64,000 bases of DNA from Blastocystis sp. Blastoise (taxonomy: Eukaryota; Protista; Bigyra: Opalinata): contig JBBPEB010000025.1 in NCBI GenBank assembly GCA_039096225.1, positions 1 through 64,000 of the forward strand, in the 5' to 3' direction. A model generated the notes under the pieces. That model made no database searches and was not told the origin of the DNA. It saw only the letters and a program-made list of their open reading frames with translations. Below are positions 5,391-34,242 of the stretch, in pieces; position 1 is the first letter of the stretch, and the number at the start of each line of letters is the position of its first letter. The position numbers and the translations under genes were made by a program.

Positions 5391-5479
5391 CACTAGTAGG
5401 CATATTTACGGTTTTTCTGGCACTACTACATCGAATTGGCAATATTTCCGCAATTGTTAAAATTGCAACTGTAAAAATG

Positions 5480-5599
5480 GCAATTATTGCGATTGCAGAA
5501 ATGGCAATTATTGCGATTGCGGAAATACCAATTATTATAACTTCGGAAATACCAATTATCACAATTGCAGAAACAGCAATTATTACAATTATAGAAATC
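5480..5599. repeat. Subterminal 24-bp tandem repeat (5 units plus degenerate upstream copy), consensus about GCAATTATTGCGATTGCAGAAATA
   Basis: Units at 5480, 5504, 5528, 5552 and 5576, starting about 90 bp inside the left TIR. Contains the inverted motif GCAAT-T-ATTGC. Confidence 0.85.
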
Positions 5600-6044
5600 G
5601 GTTTAAATATTCGATCTATTAAATTCAAAAAATTTTCAGTAATATTATTAATCTACTAATATTTAACAAAACAATTTACTTTTTTATTAAAAAACATATA
5701 AAACACATATAATATTTAAAAATAAGTAGAGAAATAAGCGTTTAATTGTTTTCTCAACTAATGAAGACCAAATCATTTCTGAAAAATAACTCTAAGCAAT
5801 TATAAACATCTAAAATAAATAAACAAGATATAATGATATATATACAAACAAAGCAATTTTTGAATTAAATTTGTATCTACAAATTTTAAATCGAATTCTA
5901 AATAATATAGTACACAAATAATATAGCATACATAGATAATGGTAATAATTGAAAAACTAGCATAGTTTGAATACTATATATAGAACTATAGTGAATAATG
6001 GAAAGAAATAATACATAAATATACATATATACAAAAATAATATT

Positions 6045-6755
6045 CAACAATGTATTAAACCAGACAACAACTTTTCATCCTATATATATTTTAGTTAATA
6101 AATTAAATATATATATATACAGCACAAATACTTGGCAGCAAATCAAAGAACCAAGTATAAAAGTGGTCTATAAATATTTAACAATTAGATATAATACATA
6201 ATAATATATATATAAATATATCTCTGTATGTATATATATTGTATATGTAGAGTATCAATTTATTAAAAGTATTAAACATACTAAAATTCATAATTTATAT
6301 AATTTTCTTGAAGCTTAGCCAGTAAGGACAGTTTTTCGCTGCAACCCTTACACAAATCATCAAGAATACGATATGCTGTATAAGTAGCAGACTATAGAAA
6401 TAGAATAAAATAAGTATAATATAAATATATATACAAATAATGAATTTGTTTCTATATTATTTTGAGCACCTTCATCATTAGGAAAAGATATTGGTGATAT
6501 TCTAAAGAATTTTAGAATCGAGCTTTTGTATTTTTTGTTTCTGAAACAGTTAGCAACCACTATTTGAACTTGAAAAGGATCATTAAAATACTCAGCATCT
6601 TCATCATGTAAAGTATTCCATATAATTGACGATATTTTTATAAATAAATCGCTATTCAAGTTTAAATTATACGCATCCTTTTTCTTTTCCCACATATATA
6701 TAGAATTCGTCCGTTCTTCGTCAGATAAAACCATAGGAATTAAATTAACTGCATC
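6045..6755 (-). CDS. 3' exons of accessory gene B of the outer element (5' exons at 20937-21260)
   Basis: The acceptor at 6756 is followed by DAVNLIPMVLSDEERTNSIYMW..., which aligns by eye with accessory gene A NCLKYIPYVINEGDLIDAKNMF. Intron 6434-6392, then SATYTAYRILDDL. The 3' end is approximate. Confidence 0.75.
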
Positions 6756-6829
6756 CTATATATAAAATAATACTTAACACTGGTAGGCACTTTTGAGTTT
6801 TTGAAGGTTTTTGATTGGCTAATTTTCGT

Positions 6830-7650
6830 TCAAGACTCATTCAGCCAATAAAATTTGAATAAAAAAAAGACTTAGGCAAAAAAATGAAAATTTTGTGAAA
6901 ATTTTCAAGTCGACTTTTGATTTAGACTCAAAGACCCTATTTGACATATTTTAACAAAGAATTGACATTATTTTTTATATATAGAGGGTCACACAATATC
7001 CAAAACGTTTTTCTTTTGTTTTAAGTCGTAATTCCGACAAATAATGGGGTCAATATTTTAAAACCTCTTGTTGCTCTGTTTAAAGTTTAAACCCTCTGAA
7101 AGTCACAAGTATGTGTAAAAGTGAATAAAAAGACCTCTATGGGTCAAAACCAAAATTCAGCCAAAAAGTCAAAAATTTATATTTTTTTTACACTGAAAAA
7201 ATGAACCGAGCCTATTTGTTCCATGGGTAATCAGACCAGAGTTTTCAATTTTTAAAATATTTACGGGAATAATTTTCTCGTTCAAAACTGAGTCTATTTA
7301 TATTTTATTGAATATCAGAGGACATAAGAGTTCTATAAAAGGTTTTTCATTAAATTTTATTATGACTCAAAGTTCCGCATACAAAAAGTATGTCAAAGCT
7401 TATAAATAAAGGGTTCTTTTTCAGAATCAACTAAAAGTCTTTTTTTAAGTCATTTTTAGAGTTAATTCTTCAACGGATGGACATTTTAAGTTATAATTAA
7501 TAGTTTTTGGACGAGTTAGTCAACAGATCAGAGAGTCAACAAAAATGAGTTATTTTTTAAAGGTTAAAAGTGTGGGATGCAGTAGTATTGTATAGATGGT
7601 GTAGTGTGAAACGTGTCATAACTTATAAATATGATAGTGAGTCATAAAAA
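6830..7650. promoter_or_regulatory. TGAC/GTCA/GACTC-rich subterminal region of the inner element (candidate transposase or accessory-protein binding sites)
   Basis: Dense short motifs (gactca, gagtca, aagtca, gggtca, gtcac) in both orientations. A similar block lies at the equivalent end of the outer element. Confidence 0.55.
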
Positions 7651-8282
7651 ATTAAAAAAATTAAAGAAAGGTATTTTCATGAAAAATTTTGTATTTCACT
7701 TGAACATTTGAATTTATTAGTGAATTTATAATTATTTTTATTTTATTGTCTCTAAGAGGAATTAGAGCTTCTCACAGTGTTTATGTATGTTTAGAAGACA
7801 AGAATGTATTGTGTCAGTATTTATTTATTAAATATTTTATATTTATTTTCATAATTCTTTTAGGTTTTCCATTCTGGAGTCCCTCTTCGTATCAGACTGT
7901 CTCCTTGGTCAACCTCAAAAATTTAATCAACAGAGTTGCTGCTACTTTTGTTTAACAAGATTATTTCCTTGTTCTTATTCCAACGCTTTCAAGAAACAAC
8001 TTGCCATGCTATAAAAAGTATATAAATGTATTATTTGTTTTTCTATTCATTACTTTTTTTTTCAATTACTAAATATAAATATGTTTTTAATATTGGCTTA
8101 TTTTAAATTGTATACAATTTATATTAATTATAATTTATATTATATAGAATGATAGGTTTTGTTGTCTATTCATACATCAAATTGTTAGTTAAGTCCTGTT
8201 AAAGATTAAACGGTATATAGATAGAAATTATTATTAATATTATTATTATTATTATATATTATATTATTATTATTATTATTTG

Positions 8283-8318
<36 letters not shown>

Positions 8319-8411
8319 TGATTATTTATTACGGGTATTCTTTAAACAATTAATAAATTACCCTATAATTATTAATAATTTTTTTATTTTCTAAAAATAT
8401 TTTATATATAG

Positions 8412-10147
8412 ATCTAAAAGAGATAGTTCTAGACTAAATAATCTACATATAAATTCTAATAAAATAAATAAAATTGATATAAATGGATCAGCTATAAATA
8501 ATATGAATAAAGATAAAAATAATAAAGAAACAGATGAATCGAATCTCTCTCTTAAAGATAATTCTATTTCTATAAATAATAATAATATACATTCAAATAA
8601 ACATCGTAAAGAATCAAATGTTTCTAATTCTTCATCTTCTTCATCTTTATTTTCATCTCAAGATAAAAATACAAATAATTCAAAAGATATATCAAATAAT
8701 AAGAATAACTCTGCTGTTAAAGGTAATAGTATTCATGATTCTTCTAAAAATATTATAAATTATATAAATTAGATGAATAATAGAAATCATAGTATTGATT
8801 ATTCAAATATAAATAATATACAAGAAGAGGAAAAAGAAAGAAAAGAAGAAAGTATACCAGAACAAAAAGAACAAAAAGAAGAAAAAATAGAAAAACATAA
8901 AGAAAAAGAGACAAAAGAAGAAAGAAAAGAGGAAGATGATGATGAAGAAGAAGAAGAAATAAAAGAAAGAGAAGAAGAAGAAGAAAAAGAAGATAATGAT
9001 AATGATGATGATACTACAAGTATAATAACAGATACCGATAGAGTATCAAATCCTATTATTCGTGGCCGTGGTCGTGGACGTGGTAAATTACGATCTCATG
9101 GAAGAGGAAGAGGTAGAGGAAGAGGAAGAGGAAGAGGTTCATTCTATCATTATGATGATAGTGATAATCAAAGTGAAAATGAAAATGATGAAACATTTGA
9201 AATTGATAATGATAAAAATGATAAAAAAGAAAATTATCATTCTATTTCACGTCATAATTATGATTCTACTTATAATATAGATGGAAATGATTTAGATAAA
9301 TATAAACGTAAAGGTATGAATATGAAATTAAAAAAAAATAAACGTCGTAATAATGATGATGATAGTTCTGATGATTATGTGAAACATAGAAGGAATAGTA
9401 TTTCTAAAGAATCTTTAAAGAGAAAATCAAGTATTAAAAGTGATTATTCTTCTATAAGTAAATCAAAAGAAGATAGTATAAAGAGTTCTACTATAAATAA
9501 TTCTATAAAAAATAATTCTATTCATATTAATAAACCATTATCTTCAATAGATGGTAAAACATTATTAGATCTAGAAGGATCTACTCATAAAAATTCACGG
9601 TTATTTGAAGAATATCATTCTATGGATTTATCAAATGAAACTAATAATAATAATACTAATGGTAATTATAAGAATAATAATAATAATAATTCAAATAATA
9701 ATAATCAAAACTCACCAACAGATACAGTATCAACAAATTCCCGTGGAAATAATTCATCAAATAATCATGCTAATGATAAATCTACTACTACTAATAATAA
9801 TAATACTAATGCTTCTAAAGATATTCCTAATGATAAATTTATTGATAAATCAGGTATATTAAATGATACAAAGAATGATCATGAATCTGAAATGGATATA
9901 GAAAAAGAAGAACGAAAACAATTACCTTATATTAATCCACCTCCAAGAACATGTATATTAAATAATATATAAAAAAGAATGCTCATTATATCAAAGAATA
10001 TAAATATAAAATACAAAATGAAAAAGAATTATAAATCAAATCATAATCATGAAGAAGAAACAAATATAAATGTAGATATGAATAATATTAGAGATATAAC
10101 GATCCAAATTCAAGATAATTCAGTAAAGAATTCAATGAGAATTTAAA
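8412..10147 (+). pseudogene. Cargo: low-complexity N/E/D/K-rich protein gene fragment with RG repeats, interrupted by stops
   Basis: ORFs 8503-8772 and 8773-9972 are in the same frame, separated by one TAG. The frame stays open past TAA 9972 to about 10147. Contains an RGRGRG tract and acidic runs. Acceptor-like atatag near 8411. Confidence 0.6.
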
Positions 10148-10499
10148 ATACTCTATATCGTTTTTTTAATTTTTGTCTTCATCTCATTCTATATATCATG
10201 TTATTAAGAAACATATTTATTATCAAAACACAACTATTGGATGTTCAAATCTATATTGATAAATTTATTCAATAGAAGTCCTTTCTTTAAGTTCATACTA
10301 ATGAAATTTGATCAACACGATTTGAAATTCATTAATATAAATATATCCATGATGACGCATTACTTTTTTGTTTATGAACATGAAAAGGGAAATGTGATGA
10401 ATATAATTATTCGATCATTAATTACTTTGATAATATACATACAAATATTTCGATATCTATATAAAAACTTTCATTCATCTGCTCTTATAAATAATTCGT

Positions 10500-13400
10500 G
10501 AACAATGTGTTTTCTTCAATATACAATATAATTCCTTCTTATTATTCTACTTCTAATACTACTAACATTAATATTATTATTATTATTATATACTATTATT
10601 ATACTATTCTTTTATTATTCTTTTAATGTTATTCTTTCTACTATGAGTTCTTATAAAGCTAAGCATATTTAAATTATGGTTACTTTTCTATAATGATAAT
10701 AATGGTTCCTTTAATATTACTACTAATACTTTTATTGTTTGTGTTATATACTGACACTATTATTATACCTTCTTCGTTATACTAGTAATTATATTCTTAT
10801 AAAATTTCAATCTATCCTGTTATTATTTTTTTATACTATCCAAAAAATACTTTTATAATTCGTATATTATTACTATATTGTTATATATAAATTTGTTGTA
10901 TTATTATTCCTATAATATTACTGATAATAATTATTTCTGCTTCTACTATTTTTATCTCTTACTATGTTATTAGTTGGGTTATAACTATTTCTGCTTGTAT
11001 TTCATTAATTATATCACTATTACAATTATTGCAAAGCTATTATTCTTACTGGCTCATTATTTGTCTATTATTCTTCTAAAATAAAAATTATTACTATTCA
11101 TATGATTCATTTATATGATACTATTACTTCTATTATACTCCTATCTACTATGACTACTGTTTCTACTTTTAGTAATTTTATTTTCATGCTATTATCGTTG
11201 TTTATGTAACTATTGGTAGTACTATTACATACTACAAATATTTAACACTATTACTACCATTCCTATATTTTAATAGCACTTATTATTACTATTATTACAA
11301 TAAGTATATAAAATATTATGGTTAAAATGTATAGAAAAAGCAAAAAGCAAAATATTTTCTGGATAGAATATTATTAGTAATAACAATATAATTAATACAA
11401 TGTTTAATTTTTTATAATATTTAAAATATCAAATAGTATACGTGAAATATTTGATCGAAATAAGATTATAAACTATATTAGATATTAGTATAGTGATATA
11501 ATTAATGGCAGATTAATAATATAAGATAATATATTAGAATATGAAGTATAAAGTAATTATTGCAATCATTATTTAATATAATATTATTTCCATTGAAGAG
11601 TTATTATAAAATAAGATATGCAAAGATAACGAGTTTTATAAAACACGAATATAATACTATCATAGTTTATTATATCTTATTGAAGGAGAGCAAATATTAT
11701 TTAATATAATTAATAATGAAAGCATACTAATCTAATTTAAAATTCCAGATTATTTAATGGTTTCTCTTCATTTTTTAATGAAATAATTATGCAGATTCTT
11801 ATTATTATTAGCATTATAAATCTTGCTATTACATGTTATATAATAATTTTTAATATAAATTTTTCTAGAACTTAAACTTAATATATCAGAAAATATAAAA
11901 AGAAATATCATGGGACATATATATAAATAATATATGATACGATTTTAATCGTTATGAAGCATACACTAAGTTCCAATTATGTATTGTTCATTATAAGCAA
12001 TTCATATAATACATGATATTTTATTTGTACTACTACATTTGTTTTTATATTGTTATATAAAATATTATTTTAATAATACTACATATTATGTAGCTTTACA
12101 ATATTAAACTCTTAATATTTATGTTATATTTTATGCCTTTAGTTATGTTTGATATTCAAAGTATTTTACTGGTCTTAATAAGTATTTAACATATTTAAAT
12201 GCATATTTATATTTTATGTATAATGGGTTATTATTATATCATTATATGGATTCCTATAAAGTAATTAATACTTTATTAGATATACAAATGAGACTATTCT
12301 CTATATTTTTTTGAACAATATGTTATCTTCATATTACCTTTCTCATTTTGTATTAACCACTTTATTGATCTTTTAACAATTATTAGTGTTATCTCAAACT
12401 ATCTATTAGTAATTAGTTGTTACTAATACTTATTTCTAATTTGAGCACTCAACTATTCCTATTGAATATCTGCTATAATGCAATTATTGATGATGTCTGC
12501 ATTATTGAAGATCATTCATTTTGTTTGTAAACTATTATTAGTATAGAAATTCATTAATAGTATAAAATAAATATTTAATATTTCAAATGATATAATGAAT
12601 TGAATAAAGATTTCTATTATATGTATACTATGTCCATACATACTATGAATAATGATACTTATATTTCAGTATATTTAATATTCAAGAATTATCTATAACA
12701 ATTATCAATTCTCTATTAATCTTATCCTTCAATTGATAATGTTTTATATTCGTATTATTCCTATAAACTATTATTCTTATGGTACTACTAATTATAGTGT
12801 TATGATTTATATATTTTTTTGTATCATTATATATATGCTGTGTCATTTTTATTATGAATCGATGATTAATTTAGAACCATTTATACTTATTTATTATATC
12901 TAATATTGTATTTACTTCTATATCTGCATTTTTTTTTATTCCTATTATTTTATTTTACCGTTATATACTAATGTTATTCATACTATAACTATGTTCCATC
13001 AAATTTAATAGGAATTATCATAGTCACGTCAACTTAATGTCCTACTTATTACTACCACTTCTATGTCAATACTTATAACTAGAACTAATTCTATATAATA
13101 ATCAATACTATATTTAAAATGCATATAATTGAACAACTACTTCGTAATAATGTGAATATAGTTATTTATATGGACAATAATAACTCCCTTGATCCTAAAT
13201 GTATTGTATTTAAAGTAATAATTTTGCATCAAATTGATATTAAATCTATCTATCTATCTATCTATTTGTTCATAAAATTTTTAGTTATAATAATAACTAT
13301 CTTAATAATGATAATAGAATAACGTTAATCCTTATAGAAAACTATTAACGAAATCGAATAAATTATTCTTCTAACTATACTTCCTACATCGACATATTTC

Positions 13401-14050
13401 TACAAGCTAGTCTTCATCTTATGTATAGCTATTTTTTTTTATAAATTATGAATTATGCTCTAAACAGTAGATGAGGTAAAGATCTAATAGTAATATTCAT
13501 TTAATTTATTATCAAATAATGTTATTTGAAGAATTTGCATACTATTCATAATAGAATACATTTCTCCTAAATTATTCATTCTAACAAAACTCCTGATGAT
13601 TATATATAATCACTTTTGTAAGACCTTAAAAATATATTAACTGATATGATTATTTTTTTTTAAATATTATTTAAATATAGATAAATAAATGTAATAAACA
13701 TTACCCATTTAAATTGTTATTTCACATAATGAAAGAAATTTATATTGCGTTTATTCTTCTAAATAATCTTCTCTTTCTGTCATATTTTATTACTATATTT
13801 TAAATCATTACGTCCTATTATATTTAATTGGCATGTATTTATTGCTACAACTCTTGTATTACTACAATATAACTTGATTCTTTATACATTATTCCAACAA
13901 TAATACTTTATTTCTTCATTTTAAATGTATACCTAGCATTAATGAGAATAGTTCAAATATATTATCTCATTTTATCTGATTGTTTTATGTAGTAATAGTT
14001 CATTATTAAATTTAATATTGATTAATACAAAGAATATTGATATTATTTGA
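10500..14050 (+). pseudogene. Cargo: heavily decayed S/T/I-rich coding-like sequence, possibly from the giant surface-protein family
   Basis: Residual TCT/ACT/ATT codon periodicity on + with many stops and no long ORF. Composition resembles the sense strand of the 36.6-60.4 kb gene. Not aligned computationally. Confidence 0.35.
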
Positions 14051-14325
14051 AATACAAAATGAAATTATTACATAACTTTAGTTAAAATACGTTAAATATA
14101 TTATAAGAATATAAAAGAAATGGATATTAGATACATATTACAAGAATGTAAAAGATAAAATCATGTATAACATAAAAATATATATATATATATATATGAA
14201 ATTTAAATGATTTATAATATGAAAACATAAAAGAAAATGATATTATATATAATATAATAAAATTATTAGTATTTATAATATAAAAAAGTAAAGGTTATTG
14301 TTATTCATATATTGGCTATCGCAAT

Positions 14326-17300: not shown

Positions 17301-17748
17301 CAGGAACCAAAAGTTTTATGACATCATTTATTAGTTCGTATAGTTTCTTAATCTTCTCCGTACTTATTTTAAGCTGACACCAACAATCATAAACGAAATC
17401 TTCAATTCTTGAATTATCATTTATATTATTTTTTGATGATGGCTTCTAAATAGTTTAAAGAGAGTTATATGAAATAAAAAATATATAAAATAAAATATTA
17501 TAATGTTTTTAAAATACCGAATTTATAATTTTTTCCAAAAACAAATCAGATATTTGTTTAGTAGTGTTTGAGTTCACGTCTTCATCTGAATCTAATTCTT
17601 CCATCAAGTGAGAAGTTTCGATGATTATATTCTCTTCATGAAGAGAGACATGATCAGTTGAAATTGCTAAATATATAAATAAAATTAAAAGTCTCTTACA
17701 TCTACGTTTTGATGGAAACCCAGGAAGATCATATTGACGTCCTGTCAT
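14326..17748 (-). CDS. CACTA/CMC-type DDE transposase of the inner element (multi-exon)
   Basis: ATG 17748. Introns 17699-17667, 17517-17446 and 17102-16875. N-terminal Cys cluster (CDNC..CKNEEC). Core motifs LTCDG, YGDCMA, FPCRYC, LDPMHLFNN, QIHLVQHL..G.I..ST.QSER are typical of CMC transposases. The last exon below 14470 is uncertain. Confidence 0.88.
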
Positions 17749-20936: not shown

Positions 20937-21260
20937 ATATATTTTCTTTTTTGAAGATGTATAAGATCCAGAATATCCAAGGTGTTTTACACAGAGTTTT
21001 CTCAAAAAGACTTCAACTTCCATGTCACAGGAATAATTATACGGTCCTAAAACAATTACAAAATAATAAAAACTTACAATACCACCATTAATCAAGTCTT
21101 CGAACCCTTTGAAAAAGGATTTGACTTGTTTAACTGTTCTTCGTTTTAGTCGATGAAGTGATTTCAATTTTTTCTTACCATGTGTTTTATTTTTATCATA
21201 AGTAACAGCAGAAATGGTTTCATCTGTTGATGAAATATCGCTAACCACTGATGAATTCAT
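20937..21260 (-). CDS. 5' exons of accessory gene B of the outer element
   Basis: ..KQVKSFFKGFEDL..EVEVFLRKLCVK..SSKKKIY| with a GTATGT donor at 20936. Matches gene A KKFKLKLFGAFHEF..METFFRKEALK..STKQIK| with the same intron position. Confidence 0.75.
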
Positions 21261-22414
21261 TTTTTTCGTCTGCTGATATAATAAAAAATAATTAACTGGT
21301 TAAAGAAAAACAACTAAAACACAACAGAATTATATTTTTGCGTAATATCCTATATAACCGTGATTTTTTGGAAATAATGGCCATAAATAAACAGATTCTT
21401 TTATTATTGGATCTTTCATACTATTTTCATAATAATCGTTTTCCACGTTCGAATATATATATGCAAATAAACACTATTTTTTCAAAAATATAACATAATG
21501 CAGGCTATTGTAGTAATATCCTTTGTCATTTTTACTTATGTTAAAGAAACAATTATTGACTCTTAATACCATTTTCTTTACTTCATAAAACATGACAACC
21601 GTAAAGCATTTTAAAGCGCATAAAAAACCATCAGTGATTAGTACATATCTATCTATTTTTTGACCAGATTGCATATCAATTATAATTATATACTGTTTCA
21701 ATATTTTTAGAATCAATTCAAAGAAATGTATCCATAAGCAACCATAATCAAATAAACATTTTAATTAACACATTTAATGAAAGTATGTATAATAAAGTAT
21801 TATCAAAAATATCTAAACAATTAAATTTATTAATAAGCTTATTTCATTAAATTCTCAATTGATTATTTCATTTTATATAATATATAACTAACTAATTATC
21901 AGCTATCTATTGGTTTAACATCTTATAGCCAATATATATTGTATACTAGTTAAACTTTTATTATATTTCATTACATGAATCTTCATATGTTGTCTATAGC
22001 CCAGGATATTCGCAAAAATAGCGTTATACTTCGCCAAATTATTGAAATAGCAGTATAAATAATAAGCTTTTATATTTCCATATCATATATTATTCATTTT
22101 AACCATTATATACATATATCGTATTTATATAATAAGGTATTATATAGTAAATACTCTAGCAATTGCTTTTTTGTAATATTATAATTTAGAATATATTACT
22201 ATTACATAATAAATATCTAACTTTATATAAATATCCATAATTAAATTATTATTATATATTTCAGAGCAAATAAAAATGAATTGTAATCAATATATTTATT
22301 TAGATTAGTTTCTAATATAAATAATAATTATATTTATATATTATTGCTTTTTATTTATAAACTGTGCTATTTTTACTTCTTATATGCATTATTTAAATAT
22401 TACTATATATATAG

Positions 22415-25408
22415 AATAAAGCAACGATTTATGGATCAAAATCAATTAAAGATGAATTAGAAGATGAAGCCTATAAGCTGTGGGTAACGCTGGAACTTCC
22501 ATATGAAAAATTCCATGATATTTTAGTTTATACAAATTCAACGTTCAAATTGGTAGATAGTAGTTATAGTACACTTCTGAATAGCAATTATGACTCACAA
22601 ACATACATCAGAAGCATTAGATCTAAACAATTCTTCTTTCCAGCTTCATTGAGACTTTATATATGTCCTGAATGTTTAAAAATTACAAATGCTACATCTT
22701 CTAGAAACAGCCTATCTTACGACGATATTAAATGTTTCGAGCATAACGATATTTCAGATGATAGTATATATATATAATGATATTTAAGTATCTTAATAAA
22801 TACTTAATAAAATTGTACTATTCACTATATTCTATAGAAATATATCATACAACAATACTTCCTATTATCCCACGAATAAAAAGACTTCTTTCTAATGCTG
22901 ATCTTCTAGAAGATATATCGTTTTACAAGAAGGACGATATAATGCAACTGCTAAGTCTTCATAGTCATGAAGACTATTATATTCAAACATCAGAGATGGA
23001 TACTCGTAACATAACACAAAATACATTAGTTGATATCCCTTATTTCTTTTATGGTTCTACATTTTATAAATATACGCAACCTCTTGTAGAAAAAGGCGAT
23101 ATTTTCCTCTTTTTTTCTGTGACTTCTGATGGGATAACTGTATTTAATAAACCTCAAAAGGAAGAAAATAAATCCAGTTATCCTATAACTCTTAAACTTC
23201 TTAATTATAACCAGCAACGGAAATATGATCATCGAAAATTATGGTGTTATGCATGCCCCACGAGTAATATGATCTCTCCCTTAATTGATATACTTAGCAG
23301 CGAGTTTCAACTTTTAAATGAAGGCTTAGATATTTATATAGATAGCATTCAACAAACAAAACGGGTAATAGGAATTCTACTCAATGTATATGGAGATTAC
23401 CCTGCAGTCTCAAAAATGGTAAACACACCTTCATCTTCAAGTGTACACCCGTGCCGTTTTTGTAGAATGACAGTACGTAGATCTAGAGATTCTGCATTTC
23501 ATGAAGGAATCAAGTGTTGTTATGAAGAATCTCGAGAATTCAGAATTTCAGATGAAGGAATAACAACATTTTTTATACCAACTTATTGTCCAAATGATCC
23601 TATGAATACAAACAACATTATAGTAGATTACATCGATGAATCAAATATTGATGCAAATATGTGTGTATCCTTATCATCACCATTAGAGATTCCTTCATCA
23701 AGCATATATAGTGACTCGTTAACATTATATAGTCCTGTTCTTCGTTCATCTGAATCATCTTCTTCAATAATACCTGGAACAAATGAAGTGAGTCCAGAAG
23801 AAAGAAATCTAGGATTCAGTAAACTTACATACTTCAATATACTTCAATCATGTTCCCTTGATCCAATGCACTTAATAAATAATGTAGCTACATCACTCAT
23901 GGAGTACCTATGGAATTATCCAAAGACAAACGCTTATTCCAAATTAAAATATACTATGTCTCAAAATGAAATGCAAGACTTCATTACAAGAATATCGCTA
24001 AATGAGGAAAATAAGAAGATTATTATGGAAAGAATAAAAGATATGAATATATTATATGATACTGATATGTATCAACTTATATCTATTCTAAATGACTTGA
24101 ACTTCTATTCATCAACATCACATACACGTATTCTTCTTTTTTCAACAGTATTTCCTATCCTTCTATCTGATTTTACTTATGAAGATTCACCTTTAATACT
24201 AATAATAGAAATATTTGGTTCTCTTATTAGTGATATAATGAGAATTAATCCAATAACAGAAAAGGATAATCTACTCACTTTTGAGAAGAAATGTATTCAA
24301 TTCGTATCCATAATTGAATCTATTCTACCTTCTGCTTTAATAACAACTCAAATTCATAGTATAAAGCATTTAGCGTCATGTATCAGGGACTGTGGTTCTC
24401 TTTTCTATACTTCGACTTGGGAAGCAGAAAGATCATATCGTAATATCAAGAGAATAACTAAAGGAACAAAATCGTTTAATGAGTCAGTAATAATCAAAGT
24501 TCAGGATCAAGAATCAATACAGATACATATAGCACCTCAGATATCTTCTACTACTGCTGATAACAATACAAATGACGGTAGATTTACATCCTTACAACAT
24601 AAAGAGATTCTAATTAAAGATAATCCAGAAATAAAATCATTTAAAGGTAAAGAAAGCCACTCTCTGCCAAATATCATAGACAGAGATAAACTTGCAATAA
24701 TATTATTATTATCTTCTAAATGCTCTTCTTTAATTCAATCCAAGCTTTTTTCGGAAGTATTTCATGAGTCAGACACTCCTTATAGAAGAGAAGAGATAAT
24801 AAGAAATAACATAGATATCCAAACCAAATTGCTTGATAAATTTAAATTACTGAGAAAATATTGTTATGATTCTGTTATAGTGAATAATAATATTCTATTC
24901 AGAGTATATAAAGGATTAACAGAAGGAGCCAAAAATAATTCATATATATTAAGAATCTCCCCAATCCAGTCTAATTCTGGAGACTTTGTAATGCATCCTT
25001 TTTTGTATAGTATACTATCTTTCATACAAATAGAAGACGTATTAATATTAAAGTTGCATAAGTATCCTGTTTCAAACTACAGTCAATCAAGACTATATGC
25101 ATACTTTATTAATCGTTCTAAAACAATTACATCCCAACTAGAGACAGATTACGAATACTTTCTTTTAGACTCAATGAAACCATTTAATATTATATGTGTA
25201 GATTTCGGTATATCGAAAGAAATAACTAATGATATCAACGGTGAATATGTAAGTAATCTATTGTATTTCAATATATATATAATTTCTATAGATAGGAGAG
25301 AATAATAACAACAACTCAACTTTGAAGAAGATAAATAGAAAGGATTCATATGTTGTATCTGTTTTTATACCATACAAAGCAATTTTATATGAAGATGATA
25401 ATAACTAA
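22415..25408 (+). CDS. CACTA/CMC-type DDE transposase of the outer element (multi-exon; true start further upstream, unresolved)
   Basis: Exon 22415-22763 (CPEC..C..H), intron 22764-22837, main exon to 25248, intron 25249-25291, stop at 25408. Motifs VTSDG, YGDYPA, HPCRFC, LDPMHLINN, QIHSIKHL..G.L..ST.EAER. Collinear with the inner transposase. Confidence 0.88.
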
Positions 25409-25521
25409 ATTTTTTTAATTATGTTTCAATGTTTATTATAACTTTCTAATTTATATAATAGTCTATTCCTGTTATATTAAAAAATTGTATTTCTTTATCT
25501 ACATTCTTTGTTTTGTTATAA

Positions 25522-26290
25522 AATAAGTAGATGTTATAAGGTATAAGTAGATTTTATAAGGTATAAGTAGATATTATAAGGTATAAGTAGATATTATAAG
25601 GTATAAGTAGATATTATAAGGTATAAGTAGATATTATAAGGTATAAGTAGATATTATAAGGTATAAGGTATAAGTAGGTATAAGTAGGTATAAGTAGGTA
25701 TAAGTAGGTATAAGTAGGTATAATAAGATATAAGTAGGTATTATTAGGTATAAGTAGGTATAAGGTATAAGTAGGTATAAGTAGGTATAAGGTATAAGTA
25801 GGTATTATTAGGTATAAGGTATAAGTAGATATTATTAGGTATAAGGTATAAGTAGATATTATTAGGTATAAGGTATAAGTAGGTATAAGTAGGTATAAGT
25901 AGGTATAAGTAGGTATAAGTAAGTATAAGGTATAAATAGGTATAAGTAAGTATAAGGTATAAGTAGGTATAAGTAAGTATAAGGTATAAATAGGTATAAG
26001 AAGGTATAAGGTATAAGTAGGTATAAGTAAGTATAAGGTATAAATAGGTATAAGAAGGTATAAGGTATAAATAGGTATTAGAAGGTATAAGAAGTTATAA
26101 GGTATAAGAAGTTATAAGGTATAATAAGTTATAAGGTATAAGAAGTTATAGGGTATAATGTATTATACGTTATAAGAAGGTATAAGAAGGTATAAGAAGG
26201 TATAATAAGGTATAAGGTACTAGAAGATATTTTGTATAATGTATAAGGTATAATGTATAAGGCATTATAAAGTATAAGATATAAGAAAAT
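25522..26290. repeat. Compound minisatellite: 20-bp ATAAGGTATAAGTAGATATT units grading into 10-bp GGTATAAGTA and 7-bp GGTATAA variants
   Basis: Directly visible and almost devoid of C on the + strand. Lies just downstream of the outer transposase stop. Confidence 0.93.
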
Positions 26291-26389
26291 AATAATGAAC
26301 ATGAAAACATAATTATTACATTATTACTAACATACATGCTAGAAAATATATTTATATAAAACTTGATGAAATATTACGTTATAAATATA

Positions 26390-27620
26390 TATATACATTT
26401 CTTTTTTAGTTTTTGGTAGGATTTGCTGGTTCCTTTTAACAGTTTTCTTTTATATTCTTAGACATAAGATATCGGATACTAATTTATCTCATCACTTTTT
26501 GACAGACTATTCATAATAATAGAATAAGAATCTCTCAATATCATATGAATGATTGACTCAACATAGTTATATTGATCTTCAAATGTAACTCAATATGTTT
26601 GAATAGCAATAGTATATATTACCTAATGAAGTAGTCATAAAGAACTGTATATCAGTAATAGTTTAAAGAGTTACCAATATAAATGAAAAATCTAAAGACA
26701 ACAGCATACTCAAGAAAAACCGTAAATCAAATATATAATGTGTTCTAATAGAAAGAATAGATAATAGATAATAACATGTATAAGAAAATAAACAATAGAT
26801 ACCATTAGATCTTAATATAACGACTGAGATTTGGCAAAACAACAACGATTACATTAATATACTAAATTCTATATATAAAAGAATAATTTTTAAAATAACA
26901 CAATAATATATATTGATATATATACTACCACATTGTACGAGTCTGGAAATCATGACTAGTTTTCAGGGAATGTATAACAGAAATTGAAGAGTAATAGAAA
27001 TATAGAAAGGTAGCATTCACGGTAGAAGAAGTCGTTTTTATATATTTATAAGAATATATAATAGTAAGTGATTTTCAATATTATTAAACAATATTGTAGC
27101 ATTGATGTGTAACATTAGTATTTATTACGAAGACTGAGAAAACGTATACTATGGATATATAAACGATACATTAATACTAATATTTATATATAACATATAT
27201 ATAATATATATACGTTTTATTTCTATCCCATTTAATTTGAAGATACTGATTTTATTATTCGTTTATATATACATCTATTCATGTTGATAAATAATATATA
27301 GTTAAATATATATATATAAATATATATATGTATATATATGTATATAGAAGTTTTGTCTTTACTATTAGAAAGTTAAAGAGTCGATTATGAAGATATAAAT
27401 ACATACTTATGAAGGGAAGAAATGGATTGAAGATATTCAAATGATAGATTTGTAACAATATAATATTATATATAAAAAGTACAGTTCCTAAATATGGACA
27501 AACCAATATTGAGTTCTAAATTCAATAGTAATAATAGAAGCCATTAAATACATCATTAAAACTTTTACTGCAATTTAAAGAGATAATTCTACGAATCTTT
27601 ATAAAACTAGATCATTTCTG
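26390..27620 (-). pseudogene. Cargo: decayed multi-exon gene fragment, unidentified
   Basis: Alternating exon-like and AT-rich intron-like blocks with GTA..TAG ends on the minus strand. Exon frames contain stops. Confidence 0.35.
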
Positions 27621-29499
27621 TATTCTTAAAAAATATCAAACATTTTAAATTGATTCTGTTTCTATATTTAAATAACATTAAAAAAATATATACATGAATA
27701 CAAATATCATTATAAATAATAATACGAATGAAATATTATTATATTATATACAATTATTTCATTAACACTGTATATAAGAACAAAAGCATCATGTAAAATT
27801 CTATAAAAAAAATTTATGAATTAATTAAATAAATGTAGATAAATAAATAATAAATAAAAGATAACCAAAATTATTAAATGTAAGAATATGATATAAAATG
27901 AAAATAAGCTAATCAATAAAACATACCATAGTACTTTCAATAAATGCCAAGTAATTGTTTTTTTCATATCAAATATCCAATCAAGGTATCATCAAAATAA
28001 ATCAAATAGACACTATTTCACGACGTCGCTCAACTTCTTTAATGTGTAATAATGTAATACAAGAATAAATGGTTGATACTAATTAAGAAATTCATTAATT
28101 ATTTAGACAGCTATATTATTACAGTAATGTAGTATAAGCAAATAGAAAAATTAATACTGAAATGTAAATTTTCTATGTATTATACATGAAAAAGTAAAAT
28201 AAAATATGTGTATTTCAAAAATATATTATTCATTGATGTATCCAGTTAAATTGAATCTTCACAACAATTGCTGCTTTCTTGTATGATCATTTGCTTAAAG
28301 ATATTGTCTTAAAAACAAAACACACTTGTGTTTTGTTATGTGTTTTGTAGTGTTTTTGCAATATTTATACTGATATGAAATCGTCGTCATCGATTCAGAG
28401 TTAAACCTTACTGTTGTTAACAATACTAGAAACACTCTACCAAATAGAATCAGATCAAACTATACCATATTTGGCTTATGTTTACATTAATATGTATTCA
28501 CTACAAACAAATCTATTGCGGATATAAATTTATAAACTTGAAAATTTCATCTTTTCAATCATTATATTAAATTAACAAATGTAGTATTGTTCTTTTTGAT
28601 TTATTATTTATCTCCAACATTTTCAGATGCTACAGAGTATTTTATCAATAACAAAATATGTTTTTGTTATTCATGAAAAAACATAATGTCTAAATTTTTT
28701 TCATGTGTTTCACAAACTTGTGTTTTTTAAAATCTACTTTTGGATTGGAGAATATATCATAGTGCATTGATTATATATATATATAGAAAACTATTCATAT
28801 TATATTGTTTTCAAGAATGAAACAAATAAGAAAGGTTTAGATTATTCTTAAGCTCAAACGACTATTTTTAGCAATCTTTTCATTGTATTTCCTATGAGTT
28901 TATTATCTATTTCGTTTTATAATATTAGGATGGACAAAAGACATAAGATATAATCATTTAAAATACTTAAATTTATTTACAAATAAACAATACAAGAAGT
29001 ACTATAATGGAATAGAAATTCTATTAACTCATATCGTTTAATATCTACTGTAAATATATATACAATTCTTAGAACTGTAACAATATCAATATGTAAATAA
29101 TCAGTAAACATTTTACAGATATTATGTTCTTATTGAATAATTAGAAATAATAAATATATTTTTATACAAACTGTATATAAATGAAAATCTATAGATACTA
29201 TTATTATATTATTAATGAGATAATTGATAGAGACAATAAGAACTTTGCATTTATATTTTATATGATTTATACATAATGAACAATCATATTGACTTTCTTT
29301 ACAACTTGAATAGACTAAAGGAGAAAAATGCTAACTTTGTCTAATTCTTTTACAACTAGAAAAAGTCGATCGTTGCATTTCTTTAATTCAAAGAAATCTA
29401 ATTTTTTTCAATAAGACAGAAATAAATTTATTTGAAATATTTCCTTTTTTATAGCATATAGTAAAGATATAATTTTTTACTAAAATGAATTAAAATGAA

Positions 29500-31700
29500 C
29501 CATCAACAAAAAGTAAACATATATATATTAGTTAACATATCATATAGTAGCAAAAGATTTATTAATAACTCATAAATATATGTATTACTACCTTTTTTGT
29601 ACCATTATTTGTTGAATGTATATGTAGATAAGATACAAATGACAATAATACTGAATAATAGCACAAAAATATAATTTAAAAGGAAAAGAAGGAGAAATTA
29701 AATTGAATTTATTTTAATGTTTTATCTCTACTCTGTTATACATAATTAAATAATAAAAACCGGAATGTAAGAATATATAAGACTAGTAATATATATGTTG
29801 AAGAAAGCATCGATTCTGTTTAAATAATAGCATGATTATTGTAGCATCAATAAGTATATTAATCAGTAATCTTAACAAAAAAAGCAGAAGTAAGAAAAGA
29901 ACAAGTAACTATTTAAGTATTATAAGCAAAACTAATAAATAAACTAAAATATGTAGATGTTGAACAATACAAATGCAAAGCGAAGAATTAGTAGTAGTAA
30001 ATGATGATGACACATAAATAATAGTAGTTATCTAATTAGAAAAATATTAAAAATGTTTCAAGTATAACATACTCTGAGGATAAGAAGAGATTCAGAAGAT
30101 TCAAATTTAATTAATATAATACAAGTATGATGAGAAGTAGTGTGGTAATTCTATATATAGCATTACTGTTATGAATTTTAATGGTGGAGCATCAATAGAA
30201 TAATAATAATTTATGAAATAGGAATAAAAATGTAAACAAAAAGGAGAAGTATAACAAGAGTAATATTAGTTATGTAAAAATTTGCTTTAATAACCCAATT
30301 ATAATATAATATTAAAACATAAAAATGAAGTATTAGTATTTGCTATAGAAGATATTGTTTATTTAGGTAACAAAAATATTTCAAATAATTGTTTTTATAT
30401 TAATAAAAGTTGAAATAGTTAATCTTTTCTACGTTATATATGCATATGTAAACGAATATACACAATTATATATTAATTAAGGCAATAGAGATAACTATAT
30501 GAATGTTTATTGTTTAATATAAATAGTAAGAGAATGAGTAATAGAAAGATATAATTAAACATCTAAATATTATATCATTAATGTTATTAGAAGGATTTTT
30601 TGGAATAAAATCAGGTAAATATTATTACTAATAACATAATTAATAATGGTTAAGAAGTAATATTATTTTATAGCCAATAAATATCATGTAGCAATAGTAT
30701 AAATATAATTTGTAGATAGAACAAAAATATTATTAGATTAATGTAATTTATCGAAAACATTGAGAAGAATATAAAGGAATAGTAGGAATACGATTAACAA
30801 AAGATATTCAAATGGATAGAAAAAGTACTATTACTAGTAATAGTATTCATTTATAAACAATATTTCGACAGTAATAGAAGTGTCAGTAGTAAAAGCAACA
30901 CAAGAATGTTACCTGATCATAATTAGTACAAATATATAGAGCTATAACATGTATTATTTTATGTAGGCGGACTAATATAACAATTACGTGTAGTACTAGG
31001 AATAGTTCAATAAAATCATCCTAGAATGCCAAATGAAGTAAAATATATGAGTGGTTAGCCATTTTAGAAATAACTTTAATCGTTATGTTGGAAATAATCA
31101 GATATATATGTCAATCATTGTATAAGTGGAATTATCCAAATATTTATTACAGTATTATGGTTGAAGTAATAACATAAAACAAATAATACAAATCGAGGAT
31201 ATGAATTTATATCTAGGGGTTTTTGGATTTACATGGCTTTTATAATATAAAGAATAAAAAGAGAATTAGTAAAAGTATCACACGAGAGAAACTAGTTGTA
31301 GTAAGAGTAAAAGCATATGCATTCAAAGAAAATACAAATGATCCAATTATTAAGGCACATCAAATTAATAATAGATATAGAAGATTATTATGATTAGTAT
31401 AAACACAAAAAATTATTATCCATTAGAGAAGGAAGTACTCAATAATAAATAAATTGTTTAAAGAATAGTTGAAGCAATAATATGGCAGTTATAGAAGTAG
31501 AAGAAGTATAAATAAACAAATCTAATCTTATAAAAAAATATATGTATATATATAAATATATCATAATAGAATAATAATAGGAATATTGGCTATTTAAATA
31601 GTAGCAAAGATAGAATAATAGATTGAAGACTGGTAGTTTACTGTTATCAAAATTCAGTAATACGATATATTGTACAAATATAGAAGATATAAAATAGGTA
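29500..31700 (-). pseudogene. Cargo: decayed S/T/I-rich coding-like sequence resembling the giant surface-protein family
   Basis: AGT/AGA/AAT periodicity on + like the giant gene region, with many stops. Not aligned computationally. Confidence 0.35.
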
Positions 31701-31979
31701 CAAATCCATAATTAAGTAGACATTTTCATGAGAACCAACAAATGTAAGAAAACAATAAACCAATATAAGCAGTATATAATATTACAAATAAATAAATCAG
31801 TAGAATCAATACAACTAATAAAAGGACTTTCATAATAAACAATAATAGCTAATACTAATAACTGAAGATAAAACTTACTATATATAAAATTGTATATAAA
31901 TGCATACATATGTATATATGTATATATGTGTCAAAATATAAATATATGTTTATATATATGTTTATATACATTTCATAAT

Positions 31980-33000
31980 TATTACTTTCTTCGTTGAATT
32001 AAACTCTACAAAATGTTCATCATCCTTTATTCACAATTTTGAAATAATTACCATGGTTTATTTACAAATAAATGTTCATAGCCACTATATGCAACCTCAT
32101 CTATATAAAAAGAAAATAGTTATATTATTAATACATATGTATTTACATAATTAGTGTGTACCTAGAACAATGTATTATACATATATTTGCTCAATCATAA
32201 TAAGTACTATGATTCACATAAAAATGTCTGAAACAGACTCATGAATAGAATCAGATAAAATAAGGAACGATTGAACAAAACCTAGTTAATAATATAATAG
32301 ACAATATGTATATATATAAGATACTTTCATAACACATATTACGATCATAATTCCTAATCTGTTTATTTCCATAAAATAATACACTAGTTCCACATATTGA
32401 ATAATTTGAAAATTCTTTCATTCATTGATACAATGTAAAAACCAAAATTGTATAGATCATAGAGATTGTTCAAGATCATTGAAACACTTTATATACAGCA
32501 AAAGTAGATAAATTCATAAATAATAAGATGATAAAATAATAAAATCAAAAGAAATGTGTTAATGTCAACCAAAACTTTAACCTAATATAACATAAAACAG
32601 TCAACAATGTTAGTATTTAATAAATAAAATAAGAGTATAACTGAAATACAACAAAGAAGAAAAAATAATTTATAATTATATACGGAATGTGAATAACAAT
32701 AATAACTTCCTATATCGTTAACATCTGAATTGTTGACCAACCAAGAAAAAGTAAAGAAACTTTTGAAATATTGATATCTTAATTCATTGACTTAGTGAGT
32801 ATTCATAATTACAAAGAGACCAACAATCAAGACTACGAAGAATGAATTCTAAACTATAGTAGAACACATTTCTGTATATAAAAGACAAATCAAAAGAAAA
32901 ATCAAAATCAGCTTTCTTTTTTAAATTTTTTGACTCAATTCTTGTTTTCTTTGCCATCTATTTATTATTTGAAATATGCACATATTTAGTAATGTGTGTT
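31980..33000 (-). pseudogene. Cargo: decayed intron-containing gene fragment, unidentified
   Basis: Exon/intron-like alternation on the minus strand with no intact ORF. Confidence 0.3.
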
Positions 33001-33559
33001 GTATTGAATGTAACCGATTTATTTTTGGTTACTATATTTGTTGAGAAGAGTTGATTCAATTCATTCCATTTTTTTTAAAGTAACACAATGATCATATTGC
33101 ATGCTTCTTACATATTCTGTGTACTTTCCGCACTCATAGAAAGCTATCATTCTTCAAATGATTATCAACACTTCTACATGAATTTCAGAAACAACTAGTC
33201 TATGCAAATATTTCTTGTCATACTTATGGATATGACTGTAAGAGCTAATATGTATCATAAAAAGTCTTATTGAATTATTATTAGAATAATCATGTCACAA
33301 TGTGCTGAATGTATTTTCTTTATGTATTGTTGTGATTGCAAATAATGTTTCTTTATCATTCAGAGTCACACTGTAATGAATTATAGATATTTAATTATTT
33401 TAATAAGTAATTGTAATAATTAAAGAATTCTTTTTTCCTTATATGTATTATTTTTACTTGTTTCATAATTTTTATAAACGACATAAACAGTATATAGAAT
33501 ACAAAGAATAATAATTATTAATTAATTAACCTATTTAAAAAACAAAATAGCACCATACT

Positions 33560-34230
33560 AGAGTGTCATTATGGGAATTTTTTTTAAAGAAATCCTAATT
33601 AATTTATTAAAATTTATTTATCTCTTTTTATCATTTTATTTTATTTTATTTTAATTTTTTATGTTCAGATAAACTAGATATATCATATGTGACTCATTTA
33701 TATGATAATTCTTATTTTACAAGTCACCTAACACATTTACTGATTTTGAGGTAAATATTATTATATAAACTCATTGAGTTGCTAATCAGACTTGAAATGA
33801 TAGCGTAAACAATAGTATAATTGTATAAATATTCAAAAATTAATATTTAAAAAGTTGACTGAATTACGACTCCTGTCTATTTGTTTTCAATAATAGAAAT
33901 AACTGTCACATTACAGATAGTTGTCTATACATAAGTATATAATTAACAAACAACAACTCTTACTTGCCTAATTGACTGATTATAAAAAGCCTTTAAAAGT
34001 GACTTATTTTTGCCTTTCTATGCCTCAGACACCACATTAAGTCATTATTATGTGTTTATTGTCTAAAAGGACTCTAAATGAAAATTCATTAATTAAACTT
34101 TTATCAAAAATTTCTCTAAGTCAGTGAAAAAGAGTCAACCTTTTGCATTTTTTGAATTTAAAAAAAATATTAGGTTATCCCCATGGGAAATACACCTTTT
34201 TGACTGAAAAAAAAATACCAAATTTCTTCG
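33560..34230. promoter_or_regulatory. TGAC/GTCA-rich subterminal region of the outer element
   Basis: Dense gtgactca, aagtca, ttgact and gagtca motifs. Shares a TTA(T)CCCATGG-like segment (about 34175-34190) with the reverse complement of about 7215-7230. Confidence 0.55.
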
Positions 34231-34242
34231 TGCCTACTAGTG

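What the first reader, a model, noticed from the sequence alone, without database searches (positions are those of the whole stretch)
5391..34242. A 28.9-kb CACTA transposon that splits a TLDc gene exactly
Seen: perfect 12-bp CACTA TIRs, an AAT TSD, and an in-frame rejoin of the host exon (…ERLIGDLI|GILSKSISFC…) across 28.85 kb. Known: CACTA/G ends with 2-3 bp TSDs define the CMC/EnSpm superfamily. Inference: the insertion is recent, since both gene halves are still open. I am not aware of large autonomous CACTA elements being described from this kind of protist genome, but cannot verify novelty here.
Basis: partly seen in the sequence, partly recalled or inferred. Interest (0 to 1): 0.85.

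Follow-up and report, generated by a model that had tools for sequence, protein, structure and literature searches.

The report
Nested CACTA transposons splitting a TLDc gene
Two large cut-and-paste (CACTA/EnSpm-type) DNA transposons, one nested inside the other, have inserted precisely into the first coding exon of a gene in a tortoise-gut Blastocystis genome; this is an ordinary kind of mobile element, but the family looks recently active and has not been described in this organism.

Summary
Perfect 12-bp inverted ends (CACTAGTAGGCA) lie at 5391-5402 and 34231-34242, flanked by an AAT duplication. Removing the insert rejoins a TLDc gene in frame at codon I31. Nine paralogous TLDc genes carry the uninterrupted site with a single AAT.

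The 28.9 kb is not one element. It is a 14.7-kb outer element with a 14.1-kb relative nested inside it at 6778-20893 (ends CACTGGTAGGCA, duplication TAA).

Each element encodes an open transposase of about 1,000 aa; the two are 29% identical. Pfam does not recognise them directly. A profile-profile comparison with Tnp2/Transposase_21 proteins gives 99.9% probability. The D, D, E residues and the C(2)C and H(3)H motifs are conserved, and the predicted fold matches RAG1/Transib.

The genome is Blastocystis sp. 'Blastoise'. It holds about 100 such ends, at least 45 transposase loci and several subfamilies with copies 97-99.98% identical. Sister copies sit in unrelated flanks with their own 3-bp duplications. 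A conserved accessory gene lies head-to-head with the transposase; in this copy the nested element interrupts it.

Verdict: a real, recent CMC/EnSpm insertion and a new family of a known kind. First readers of this scan noted similar CACTA elements on other pieces of this genome. Reads could not test junctions or expression.

The parts
3902..5390 (-). Downstream part of the host TLDc gene: the rest of exon 1 from codon I31, then later exons with the TLDc domain
   Evidence: ORF 4410-5393. tblastn of annotated P0006 (100% identical) and paralog P0007 maps to 5393-4455 and 4417-3905. P0006 carries PF07534 and paralog P0007 hits the TLD domain at 1.4e-24.
5388..5390 (.). Left copy of the 3-bp target-site duplication AAT (ATT = Ile31 on the gene strand)
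5391..5402 (+). Left terminal inverted repeat of the outer element, CACTAGTAGGCA
   Evidence: inverted repeat is exactly 12 bp
5462..5598 (.). Subterminal array, about 5 copies of a 24-bp unit, found at the left end only
   Evidence: Tandem Repeats Finder; k-mer enrichment
6360..6734 (-). Outer element's accessory gene, downstream exon ('exon B', 124 aa)
   Evidence: ORF. It is 100% identical in the C5 and C8 sister copies and 29-49% identical next to transposase genes of other subfamilies. No Pfam hit.
6775..6777 (.). Left copy of the TAA target-site duplication of the nested element
6778..20893 (-). Nested inner element, 14,116 bp, ends CACTGGTAGGCA (6778-6789 and 20882-20893). It sits in the roughly 62-bp spacer or intron between the two exons of the outer accessory gene.
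   Evidence: Its sister copy at C23:437100-451244 is 98.3% identical end to end, in unrelated flanks with duplication CAA. In the C5 and C8 copies the two accessory exons lie 62 bp apart.
14328..17748 (-). Inner element's transposase gene (main exon 14473-16878; open 807-aa ORF at 14443-16866)
   Evidence: tblastn of annotated P0004. Motifs TCDG, YGD, PCRYC, DPMH, QIHLVQH and SER are present.
20894..20896 (.). Right copy of the TAA target-site duplication of the nested element
20916..21260 (-). Outer element's accessory gene, upstream exon ('exon A', about 115 aa), head-to-head with the transposase
   Evidence: ORF. Conserved beside transposase genes in at least 5 loci, 30-49% identical.
21975..25405 (+). 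Outer element's transposase gene, four exons by homology (21975-22052, 22415-22771, 22837-25254, 25292-25405). Motif residues begin at: D240 nt 23128, D329 nt 23395, C348/C351 nt 23452/23461, H649/H653 nt 24355/24367, E673 nt 24427.
   Evidence: tblastn of P0001, 97-100% identical in all four pieces; residues checked; hhalign against Tnp2 proteins; predicted fold matches RAG1.
25539..26230 (.). Internal satellite with periods of 10, 27 and 54 bp, just downstream of the transposase. Its length differs between copies.
   Evidence: longer arrays in the C5 and C8 copies
26231..34230 (.). Right arm of the outer element, about 8 kb and AT-rich, with no ORF over 75 aa. Function unknown.
   Evidence: No significant similarity to the inner element's corresponding arm or to the neighbouring giant protein.
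34231..34242 (-). Right terminal inverted repeat of the outer element
34243..34245 (.). Right copy of the AAT target-site duplication
34243..34335 (-). Detached 5' end of the TLDc gene's first exon (M1-I31), with its upstream region beyond 34335
   Evidence: 28 of 31 residues match paralog P0007. The DNA flank, about 135-153 bp, is 86-95% identical to 39 paralogous loci.

Best explanation
Positions 5391-34242 are a cut-and-paste DNA transposon of the CMC (CACTA/EnSpm-Mirage-Chapaev) group. On its own it is 14.7 kb. It inserted into the first coding exon of one member of a large TLDc gene family in Blastocystis sp. 'Blastoise' and duplicated the AAT triplet that encodes Ile31. A second element of the same Blastocystis clade, 14.1 kb long with ends differing by one base, lies nested in the spacer between the two exons of the outer element's accessory gene. 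Each element encodes its own DDE transposase.

Inferred mechanism, from what is known of CMC/Transib/RAG1-type enzymes: the transposase binds the CACTRGTAGGCA ends, excises the element, and integrates it with a 3-bp staggered cut that is repaired into the duplication.

Shown here: the ends, the duplications, the paralogous empty sites, transposase homology and intact catalytic motifs, and multiple near-identical copies at unrelated sites. Inferred only: present-day activity, the role of the accessory gene, and loss of function of the host gene. The existing annotation already starts that gene at internal Met62.
For: Ends, duplication and chance control.

Exact in-frame rejoin against 7 paralogs and 9 paralogous empty sites with a single AAT.

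Nested element with its own ends and TAA duplication.

Sister copies end exactly at the inverted repeats, lie in unrelated flanks, and have different 3-bp duplications (AAT, ATT, TAA, CAA).

Genome census: 51 forward and 50 reverse end motifs against 2 and 2 for the control, with about 35 convergent pairs 6.5-33 kb apart.

At least 45 transposase loci, many open. Copies within subfamilies are 97-99.98% identical.

In the profile search, 17 of 20 distant hits tested carry Pfam Transposase_21, with or without DUF4218.

hhalign 99.9%, E 1.2e-32, over 494 columns, with D, D, CxxC, DxMH, HxxxH and E aligned. These residues are invariant or nearly so across 42 sequences.

The AlphaFold model (pLDDT 77, pTM 0.72) has RAG1, RAG-like and Transib chains as all of its top 43 PDB matches.
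Against: Pfam's Transposase_21 model does not hit either window protein directly. The only direct hit is a sub-threshold DUF4218 match, E 0.0083.

No DNA reads could be laid on the junctions, so the assembly of the two ends and the presence or absence of empty-site alleles remain untested.

Expression is unproven. Only a few short, low-depth contigs from a run of uncertain type lie on the outer transposase.

Confidence: 0.9

Rival explanations
1. The 28.9-kb composite moved as one unit. The inner element had already nested in a donor copy of the outer element, and the outer ends then carried both into the TLDc gene. The alternative is two successive insertions at this locus.
For: The outer ends are perfect, and a transposase acts on ends whatever lies between them. 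Another convergent pair 32.9 kb apart on C15 encloses two transposase genes, so large composites do exist in this genome.
Against: Neither sister copy of the outer element (C5, C8) carries the nested element at that site. No second copy of the composite was seen. Successive insertion is the simpler reading. The data here cannot decide the order of events.
Confidence: 0.2
2. The copies are immobile relics spread by segmental duplication, or the junctions are an assembly artefact, rather than the product of transposition.
For: The TLDc family is large and many paralogs lie near contig ends, where duplications and mis-joins are common. No reads were available to check the junctions.
Against: Similarity between sister copies stops exactly at the inverted repeats. 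The flanks are unrelated (10-16 of 40 bases identical) and each copy has its own 3-bp duplication. Nine paralogs show the precise empty site. A mis-join would not produce a duplicated triplet and an in-frame rejoin.
Confidence: 0.03
3. The element belongs to another lineage of the wider CMC-Transib clade (Transib, Plavaka, ESTA, Lanisha) or to a new sister lineage, not to EnSpm/CACTA proper.
For: Pfam Transposase_21 fails to hit directly. The Blastocystis proteins lie together on one side of the tree, apart from all outside Tnp2 proteins, though the support is weak. The nearest outside relative scores only E 7e-15. The accessory gene is transcribed divergently, unlike En/Spm, where (from my own knowledge) TnpA and TnpD come from one transcription unit.
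Against: Ends CACTA/CACTG with 3-bp duplications are the EnSpm signature. PlavakaA and PlavakaB termini and ESTA duplications differ (PMC12730594), and Transib makes 5-bp duplications (my own knowledge). The distant hits are Tnp2 plus DUF4218 proteins, including a named fungal Tnp2 transposase.
Confidence: 0.2

Closest known systems
En/Spm (CACTA) elements of plants and fungal EnSpm families (Tnp2 / Pfam Transposase_21 transposases)
   Same: 5'-CACTA/G...TAGTG-3' ends, short inverted repeats (12 bp here) and 3-bp target duplications. The DDE transposase has C(2)C and H(3)H motifs and a DUF4218-like region. The elements are large, over 10 kb, have subterminal repeats, carry a second gene and nest readily.
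   Different: The transposase is too divergent for a direct Pfam hit (29% identity even between the two window elements; about 15% to outside Tnp2 proteins). The second gene is transcribed divergently and has no detectable similarity to TnpA or to any Pfam family. The subterminal array is on one side only. The host is an anaerobic gut stramenopile with a 23% G+C genome.
RAG1 / Transib transposases (solved structures such as 3JBX, 6CG0, 6PQX)
   Same: The predicted structure aligns with the RAG1 catalytic core over more than 700 columns (target TM-score about 0.5, Foldseek E about 1e-6). [quoted passage not shown]
   Different: Sequence identity is only about 10%. Transib makes 5-bp duplications (my own knowledge). 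No RAG2-like partner was identified. The resemblance is at clade level, not membership.
Mirage / Chapaev lineages of CMC
   Same: They belong to the same superfamily. Several distant hits of the profile search also carry DUF1258.
   Different: The window proteins did not hit DUF1258. No labelled Mirage or Chapaev references were available, so placement relative to them is untested.

Membership tests
CMC (CACTA/EnSpm-Mirage-Chapaev) DNA transposons | Termini 5'-CAC(TA/TG)...GTG-3' forming short terminal inverted repeats | tested here: met
   CACTAGTAGGCA (outer) and CACTGGTAGGCA (inner) are perfect 12-bp inverted repeats. The same ends bound the sister copies. The genome holds 101 copies of the motif against 4 for the control.
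CMC (CACTA/EnSpm-Mirage-Chapaev) DNA transposons | Target-site duplication of 2-3 bp (3 bp for EnSpm) | tested here: met
   AAT, ATT, TAA and CAA in four complete elements. Nine paralogous empty sites carry a single AAT. A wider census could not be made.
CMC (CACTA/EnSpm-Mirage-Chapaev) DNA transposons | [quoted passage not shown] | tested here: met
   D240, D329, C348-x2-C351, H649-x3-H653 and E673 are invariant in the 6 Blastocystis proteins and invariant or over 90% conserved across 42 sequences. They are present in both window ORFs and align with the same motifs of Tnp2 proteins.
Pfam PF02992 Transposase_21 (Tnp2) | Direct match to the family HMM above the gathering score | tested here: not met
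   There is no hit at E<=0.01 for either window transposase. The only hit is DUF4218 at 16.4 bits against a cut-off of 27.
Pfam PF02992 Transposase_21 (Tnp2) | Homology to family members detectable by profile methods | tested here: met
   In the profile search, 17 of 20 distant hits tested carry PF02992. hhalign against 14 such proteins gives probability 99.9%, E 1.2e-32, over 494 columns.
CMC (CACTA/EnSpm-Mirage-Chapaev) DNA transposons | RNase H-like DDE core resembling RAG1/Transib, the only solved relatives | tested here: met
   The AlphaFold model has pLDDT 77 and pTM 0.72. Its top 43 Foldseek matches in the PDB are all RAG1, RAG-like or Transib chains.
En/Spm-type autonomous element | A second, TnpA-like protein and subterminal binding-site repeats at both ends | tested here: inconclusive
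   A conserved two-exon accessory gene lies head-to-head with the transposase in at least 5 subfamilies. It has no Pfam hit, and only a weak, sub-threshold Atlas lead to a Myb-like cluster at score 0.75. A 24-bp array lies at the left end only.
Active transposon | Observed excision or new insertion | not testable with these tools
   The support is indirect only: open transposase genes and copies 97-99.98% identical at unrelated sites. Read evidence was inconclusive.
TLDc-domain proteins (Pfam PF07534), the host gene | TLDc domain in the encoded protein | tested here: met
   The annotated product P0006, 100% identical to the window gene, carries PF07534. Paralog P0007, 87% identical, hits TLD at 1.4e-24 over residues 327-492.

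The most novel reading that the evidence does not exclude
The Blastocystis elements are a deep, unnamed lineage of the CMC clade that has diversified inside tortoise-associated Blastocystis. Transposase subfamilies fall to under 30% identity, and all relatives down to E about 1e-24 come from this one genome. The lineage carries its own conserved, divergently transcribed accessory gene of unknown fold and is still transposing. It would then be the first natural, mobilisable DNA transposon system known in Blastocystis.
Probability: 0.3. Interest if true: 0.55.

Novelty: new member of a known kind. Interest (0 to 1): 0.4.

Why it matters
Blastocystis is the commonest eukaryote of the vertebrate gut, yet its mobile DNA has been reported only as a bulk percentage. 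All the transposases found here are annotated as 'hypothetical protein'.

This locus gives a fully delimited reference element for the family: ends, target duplication, transposase gene model, accessory gene and a paralogous empty site. With it, about 100 ends and at least 45 transposase loci in the genome can be annotated.

It also shows that transposons are currently breaking members of a large TLDc gene family, many of whose members lie near contig ends. If the family is still active, it is a candidate starting point for insertional genetics in an organism that lacks genetic tools.

For transposon biology it is an ordinary, if very divergent, CMC family.

Tried and rejected
Direct Pfam scan: the two transposases, the accessory exons and the 399-aa low-complexity ORF gave nothing usable.

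Word-indexed protein search with the outer transposase: it found only five paralogs from the same genome. The exhaustive profile search was needed to reach outside relatives.

The look-up of encoding contigs for annotated proteins P0001 and P0006: not on record, so no annotated gene context could be obtained.

Adding N to the search pattern did not show the flanks, and I did not pursue this further.

Sequencing runs: only two runs held small shares of the query. Laying them on 20894-26500 gave a few short, low-depth contigs, so there is no verdict on expression or splicing, and no DNA reads for the junctions.

Protein Atlas look-ups of the two accessory exons: scores of 0.75-0.77, below any useful threshold.

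The two elements' roughly 8-kb downstream arms: no meaningful similarity to each other.

Supplementary tables of the genome paper are not held, so its repeat classes could not be checked.

The joined (spliced, rejoined) TLDc protein model was not sent to any search. The two halves were searched and aligned separately by reference.
Full report
**What is in the sequence**

The window is the first 64 kb of contig C18 of a 33.3-Mb, 34-contig assembly. Its proteins are deposited as Blastocystis sp. 'Blastoise'. This is a tortoise-gut isolate with about 23% G+C, of the kind described in PMC10690189.

At 5391-5402 the plus strand reads CACTAGTAGGCA, and at 34231-34242 the minus strand reads the same. 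With one mismatch allowed the window holds four matches, against 0.03 expected from shuffles. The other two, CACTGGTAGGCA at 6778-6789 (+) and 20882-20893 (-), are the ends of a second, nested element.

The outer pair is flanked by AAT on both sides and the inner pair by TAA. The inverted repeats are exactly 12 bp in both elements. So the 28,852 bp consist of a 14,736-bp outer element and a 14,116-bp inner element.

**The host gene and the empty site**

On the minus strand, 34335-34243 encodes MVKEKVEFDGNKIGDVQKDVIHFERLIGDLI. The reading frame that continues from 5390 downwards starts IGILSKSISFCIHSGES....

A search with the downstream half alone found 86 paralogs in the same genome. Nearly all carry Pfam TLDc, and most are about 494 aa long. 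Seven of them, aligned with the two window pieces, read ...ERLIGDLIGILSKSISFC... without a break. The two window pieces overlap by exactly one Ile, the duplicated ATT/AAT triplet.

At the DNA level, nine paralogous loci show both window flanks joined by a single AAT, with 110-115 of 117 positions identical. This is as good an empty site as paralogs can give.

The deposited gene model for this locus (P0006) begins at internal Met62. The insertion has therefore already truncated the annotated gene. Both halves remain open.

The two halves were searched separately by reference. The joined protein model was not sent to any search.

**It moves: sister copies**

The outer element has sister copies on C8 and C5. 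The C8 copy is 97.5% identical and 15,982 bp long. The C5 copy is 99.4% identical over the part compared; its first base has mutated to A, and it is interrupted by another insertion. The inner element has one sister copy on C23, 98.3% identical and 14,145 bp long.

Similarity stops exactly at the inverted repeats. The 40-bp flanks are unrelated (10-16 of 40 identical), and each copy has its own 3-bp duplication. In element orientation these are AAT, ATT, TAA and CAA. This excludes segmental duplication.

Genome-wide, CACTRGTAGGCA occurs 51 times forward and 50 times reverse, against 2 and 2 for the reversed control. About 35 convergent pairs lie 6.5-33 kb apart. The longer pairs enclose transposase loci. 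Many 6.5-10 kb pairs enclose none of the scored loci and are probably non-autonomous derivatives, though that scoring gives only a lower bound.

A profile of the transposases finds at least 45 loci, many with open frames. Within subfamilies the copies are 97-99.98% identical over about 5.4 kb. This points to recent, possibly continuing, activity.

**What kind of transposase**

The outer element carries an open 842-aa ORF at 22777-25305. By homology to the annotated C8 protein P0001 (984 aa) it is a four-exon gene at 21975-25405, and all four pieces are 97-100% identical. The inner element carries an 807-aa ORF at 14443-16866, within a gene spanning 17748-14328. The two proteins are only 29% identical.

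Pfam does not recognise either one directly. The only hit is a sub-threshold DUF4218 match.

An exhaustive profile search of 1.84 billion representative proteins gave 108 hits. Of the ten looked up by name, the nine with E-values of about 1e-24 or better are 'hypothetical proteins' of this same genome, and the tenth (E 7e-15) is an unnamed metagenome protein. Of 20 more distant hits tested, 17 carry Pfam Transposase_21 (Tnp2), often with DUF4218 and sometimes with DUF1258. One is a named fungal Tnp2 transposase.

A profile-profile comparison with 14 of these proteins gives probability 99.9% and E 1.2e-32 over 494 columns. The motifs (S/T)xDG, GD, PCRxC, DxMH, IHxxxH and ER all line up.

The residues that define the clade are D...D...C(2)C...H(3-4)H...E (PMC12730594). 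Here they are D240, D329, C348/C351, H649/H653 and E673. They are invariant or over 90% conserved across 42 sequences and are present in both window ORFs.

An AlphaFold model (pLDDT 77, pTM 0.72) has only RAG1, RAG-like and Transib chains among its 43 best PDB matches. Those were the only related solved structures returned. As far as I know, no CMC transposase has been solved.

With CACTA/G ends and 3-bp duplications as well, membership in CMC/EnSpm is well supported.

In a quick tree the 15 Blastocystis proteins lie on one side of a branch, but with weak support. The ten core members have 97% support. Without labelled references, their position relative to EnSpm, Mirage and Chapaev is open.

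**Other anatomy**

A two-exon gene lies head-to-head with the outer transposase (exon A 20916-21260, exon B 6360-6734, minus strand). It is 98-100% identical in the C5 and C8 copies. In those copies the two exons are 62 bp apart.

Copies 29-49% identical lie in the same position beside transposase genes of at least five other loci. It is therefore a conserved element gene. It has no Pfam match, and only a weak Atlas lead to a Myb-like cluster that does not count as evidence.

In the window copy the inner element sits exactly in the 62-bp spacer. This copy's accessory gene is therefore split by 14 kb, and its autonomy is doubtful. The inner element has ORFs in the corresponding position (18988-19700, plus strand), with only marginal similarity to exon A (E 0.29).

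A 24-bp array lies inside the left end only. A satellite of variable length follows the transposase. The remaining 8 kb of each element is AT-rich, lacks long ORFs, and is not shared between the two elements.

**Mechanism**

Shown: defined ends, 3-bp duplications, a precise empty site, intact catalytic motifs and young copies at unrelated sites.

Inferred from the known chemistry of CMC/Transib/RAG1-type DDE enzymes: the transposase pairs the two CACTRGTAGGCA ends, excises the element, and integrates it at a 3-bp staggered break.

The order of the two insertions is not decided. Either the outer element landed in the gene and was then hit by the inner one, which I favour, or a composite moved as a unit.

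**Limits**

No DNA reads were available. The two runs offered held only small shares, and when laid on 20894-26500 they gave a few short, low-depth contigs. Junction support, empty alleles and expression therefore remain untested.

The duplication census is limited to four elements.

**Comparison and novelty**

This is a new, very divergent family, or set of families, of a well-known superfamily.

The genome paper gives only the total transposon content, 5.6-7.5% for the tortoise isolates. No paper in the library links Blastocystis with CACTA, EnSpm or Tnp2. CMC annotations exist for other stramenopiles.

First-stage readers of this scan had noted the nested element, the two transposases, the accessory gene and similar CACTA elements on other pieces of this genome. 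The points I tested agree with those notes, except the suggested surface-protein cargo, which I could not reproduce.

Noticed in passing
window 37660-60444 (-): A single uninterrupted 7,594-aa ORF with repeated He_PIG Ig-like, HRM, Laminin_G_3, PA14, WSC and Methyltransf_FA domains. It looks like a giant extracellular adhesin-like protein and lies next to the disrupted TLDc gene near the contig end.
   Followed up: partly
window ~61844 onwards: A possible end of a third element that starts CACTGGAAAAAATTGCCACGTGGCAATTGTCAC. It is preceded by the mirror sequence TTCCAGTG and followed by many TGAC/GTCA motifs. Its sequence after CACTGG differs from both elements studied here.
   Followed up: no
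L031+L034 (C5:~686,250-692,700), just downstream of the transposase of the C5 sister copy: The C5 copy of the outer element carries an extra insertion of about 6.4 kb. It begins with a GC-rich stretch (…GGGTCACGCCGCAGGTCCGGGGCC…), and parts of it recur beside other transposase loci (L009, L018, L019). It is probably another, unrelated mobile element with GC-rich hairpin ends.
   Followed up: partly
genome G000, e.g. C8:1380378/1380595, C13:330172/330390, C16:1433300/1433517, C29:636954/637171, C31:1141937/1142154: Several short CACTAGTAGGCA-type elements carry the end motif twice at one end, 217-218 bp apart. This indicates a terminal duplication in one non-autonomous subfamily.
   Followed up: no
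genome G000, C15:1019301-1052225: Another convergent pair of CACTGGTAGGCA ends, 32.9 kb apart, encloses two transposase genes in opposite orientation. It is probably a second nested pair.
   Followed up: no
genome G000, TLDc paralogs: The TLDc family has at least 86 annotated members. Their first exon plus about 40-60 bp upstream is 86-95% identical at the DNA level. Many copies lie within about 50 kb of contig ends, which suggests a subtelomeric multigene family.
   Followed up: partly
window 8503-9972 (+), inside the nested element: Two adjacent ORFs (89 and 399 aa) of low-complexity sequence, rich in E/K, N and RG repeats, with no Pfam match. It is unclear whether they form a real gene of the inner element.
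   Followed up: no
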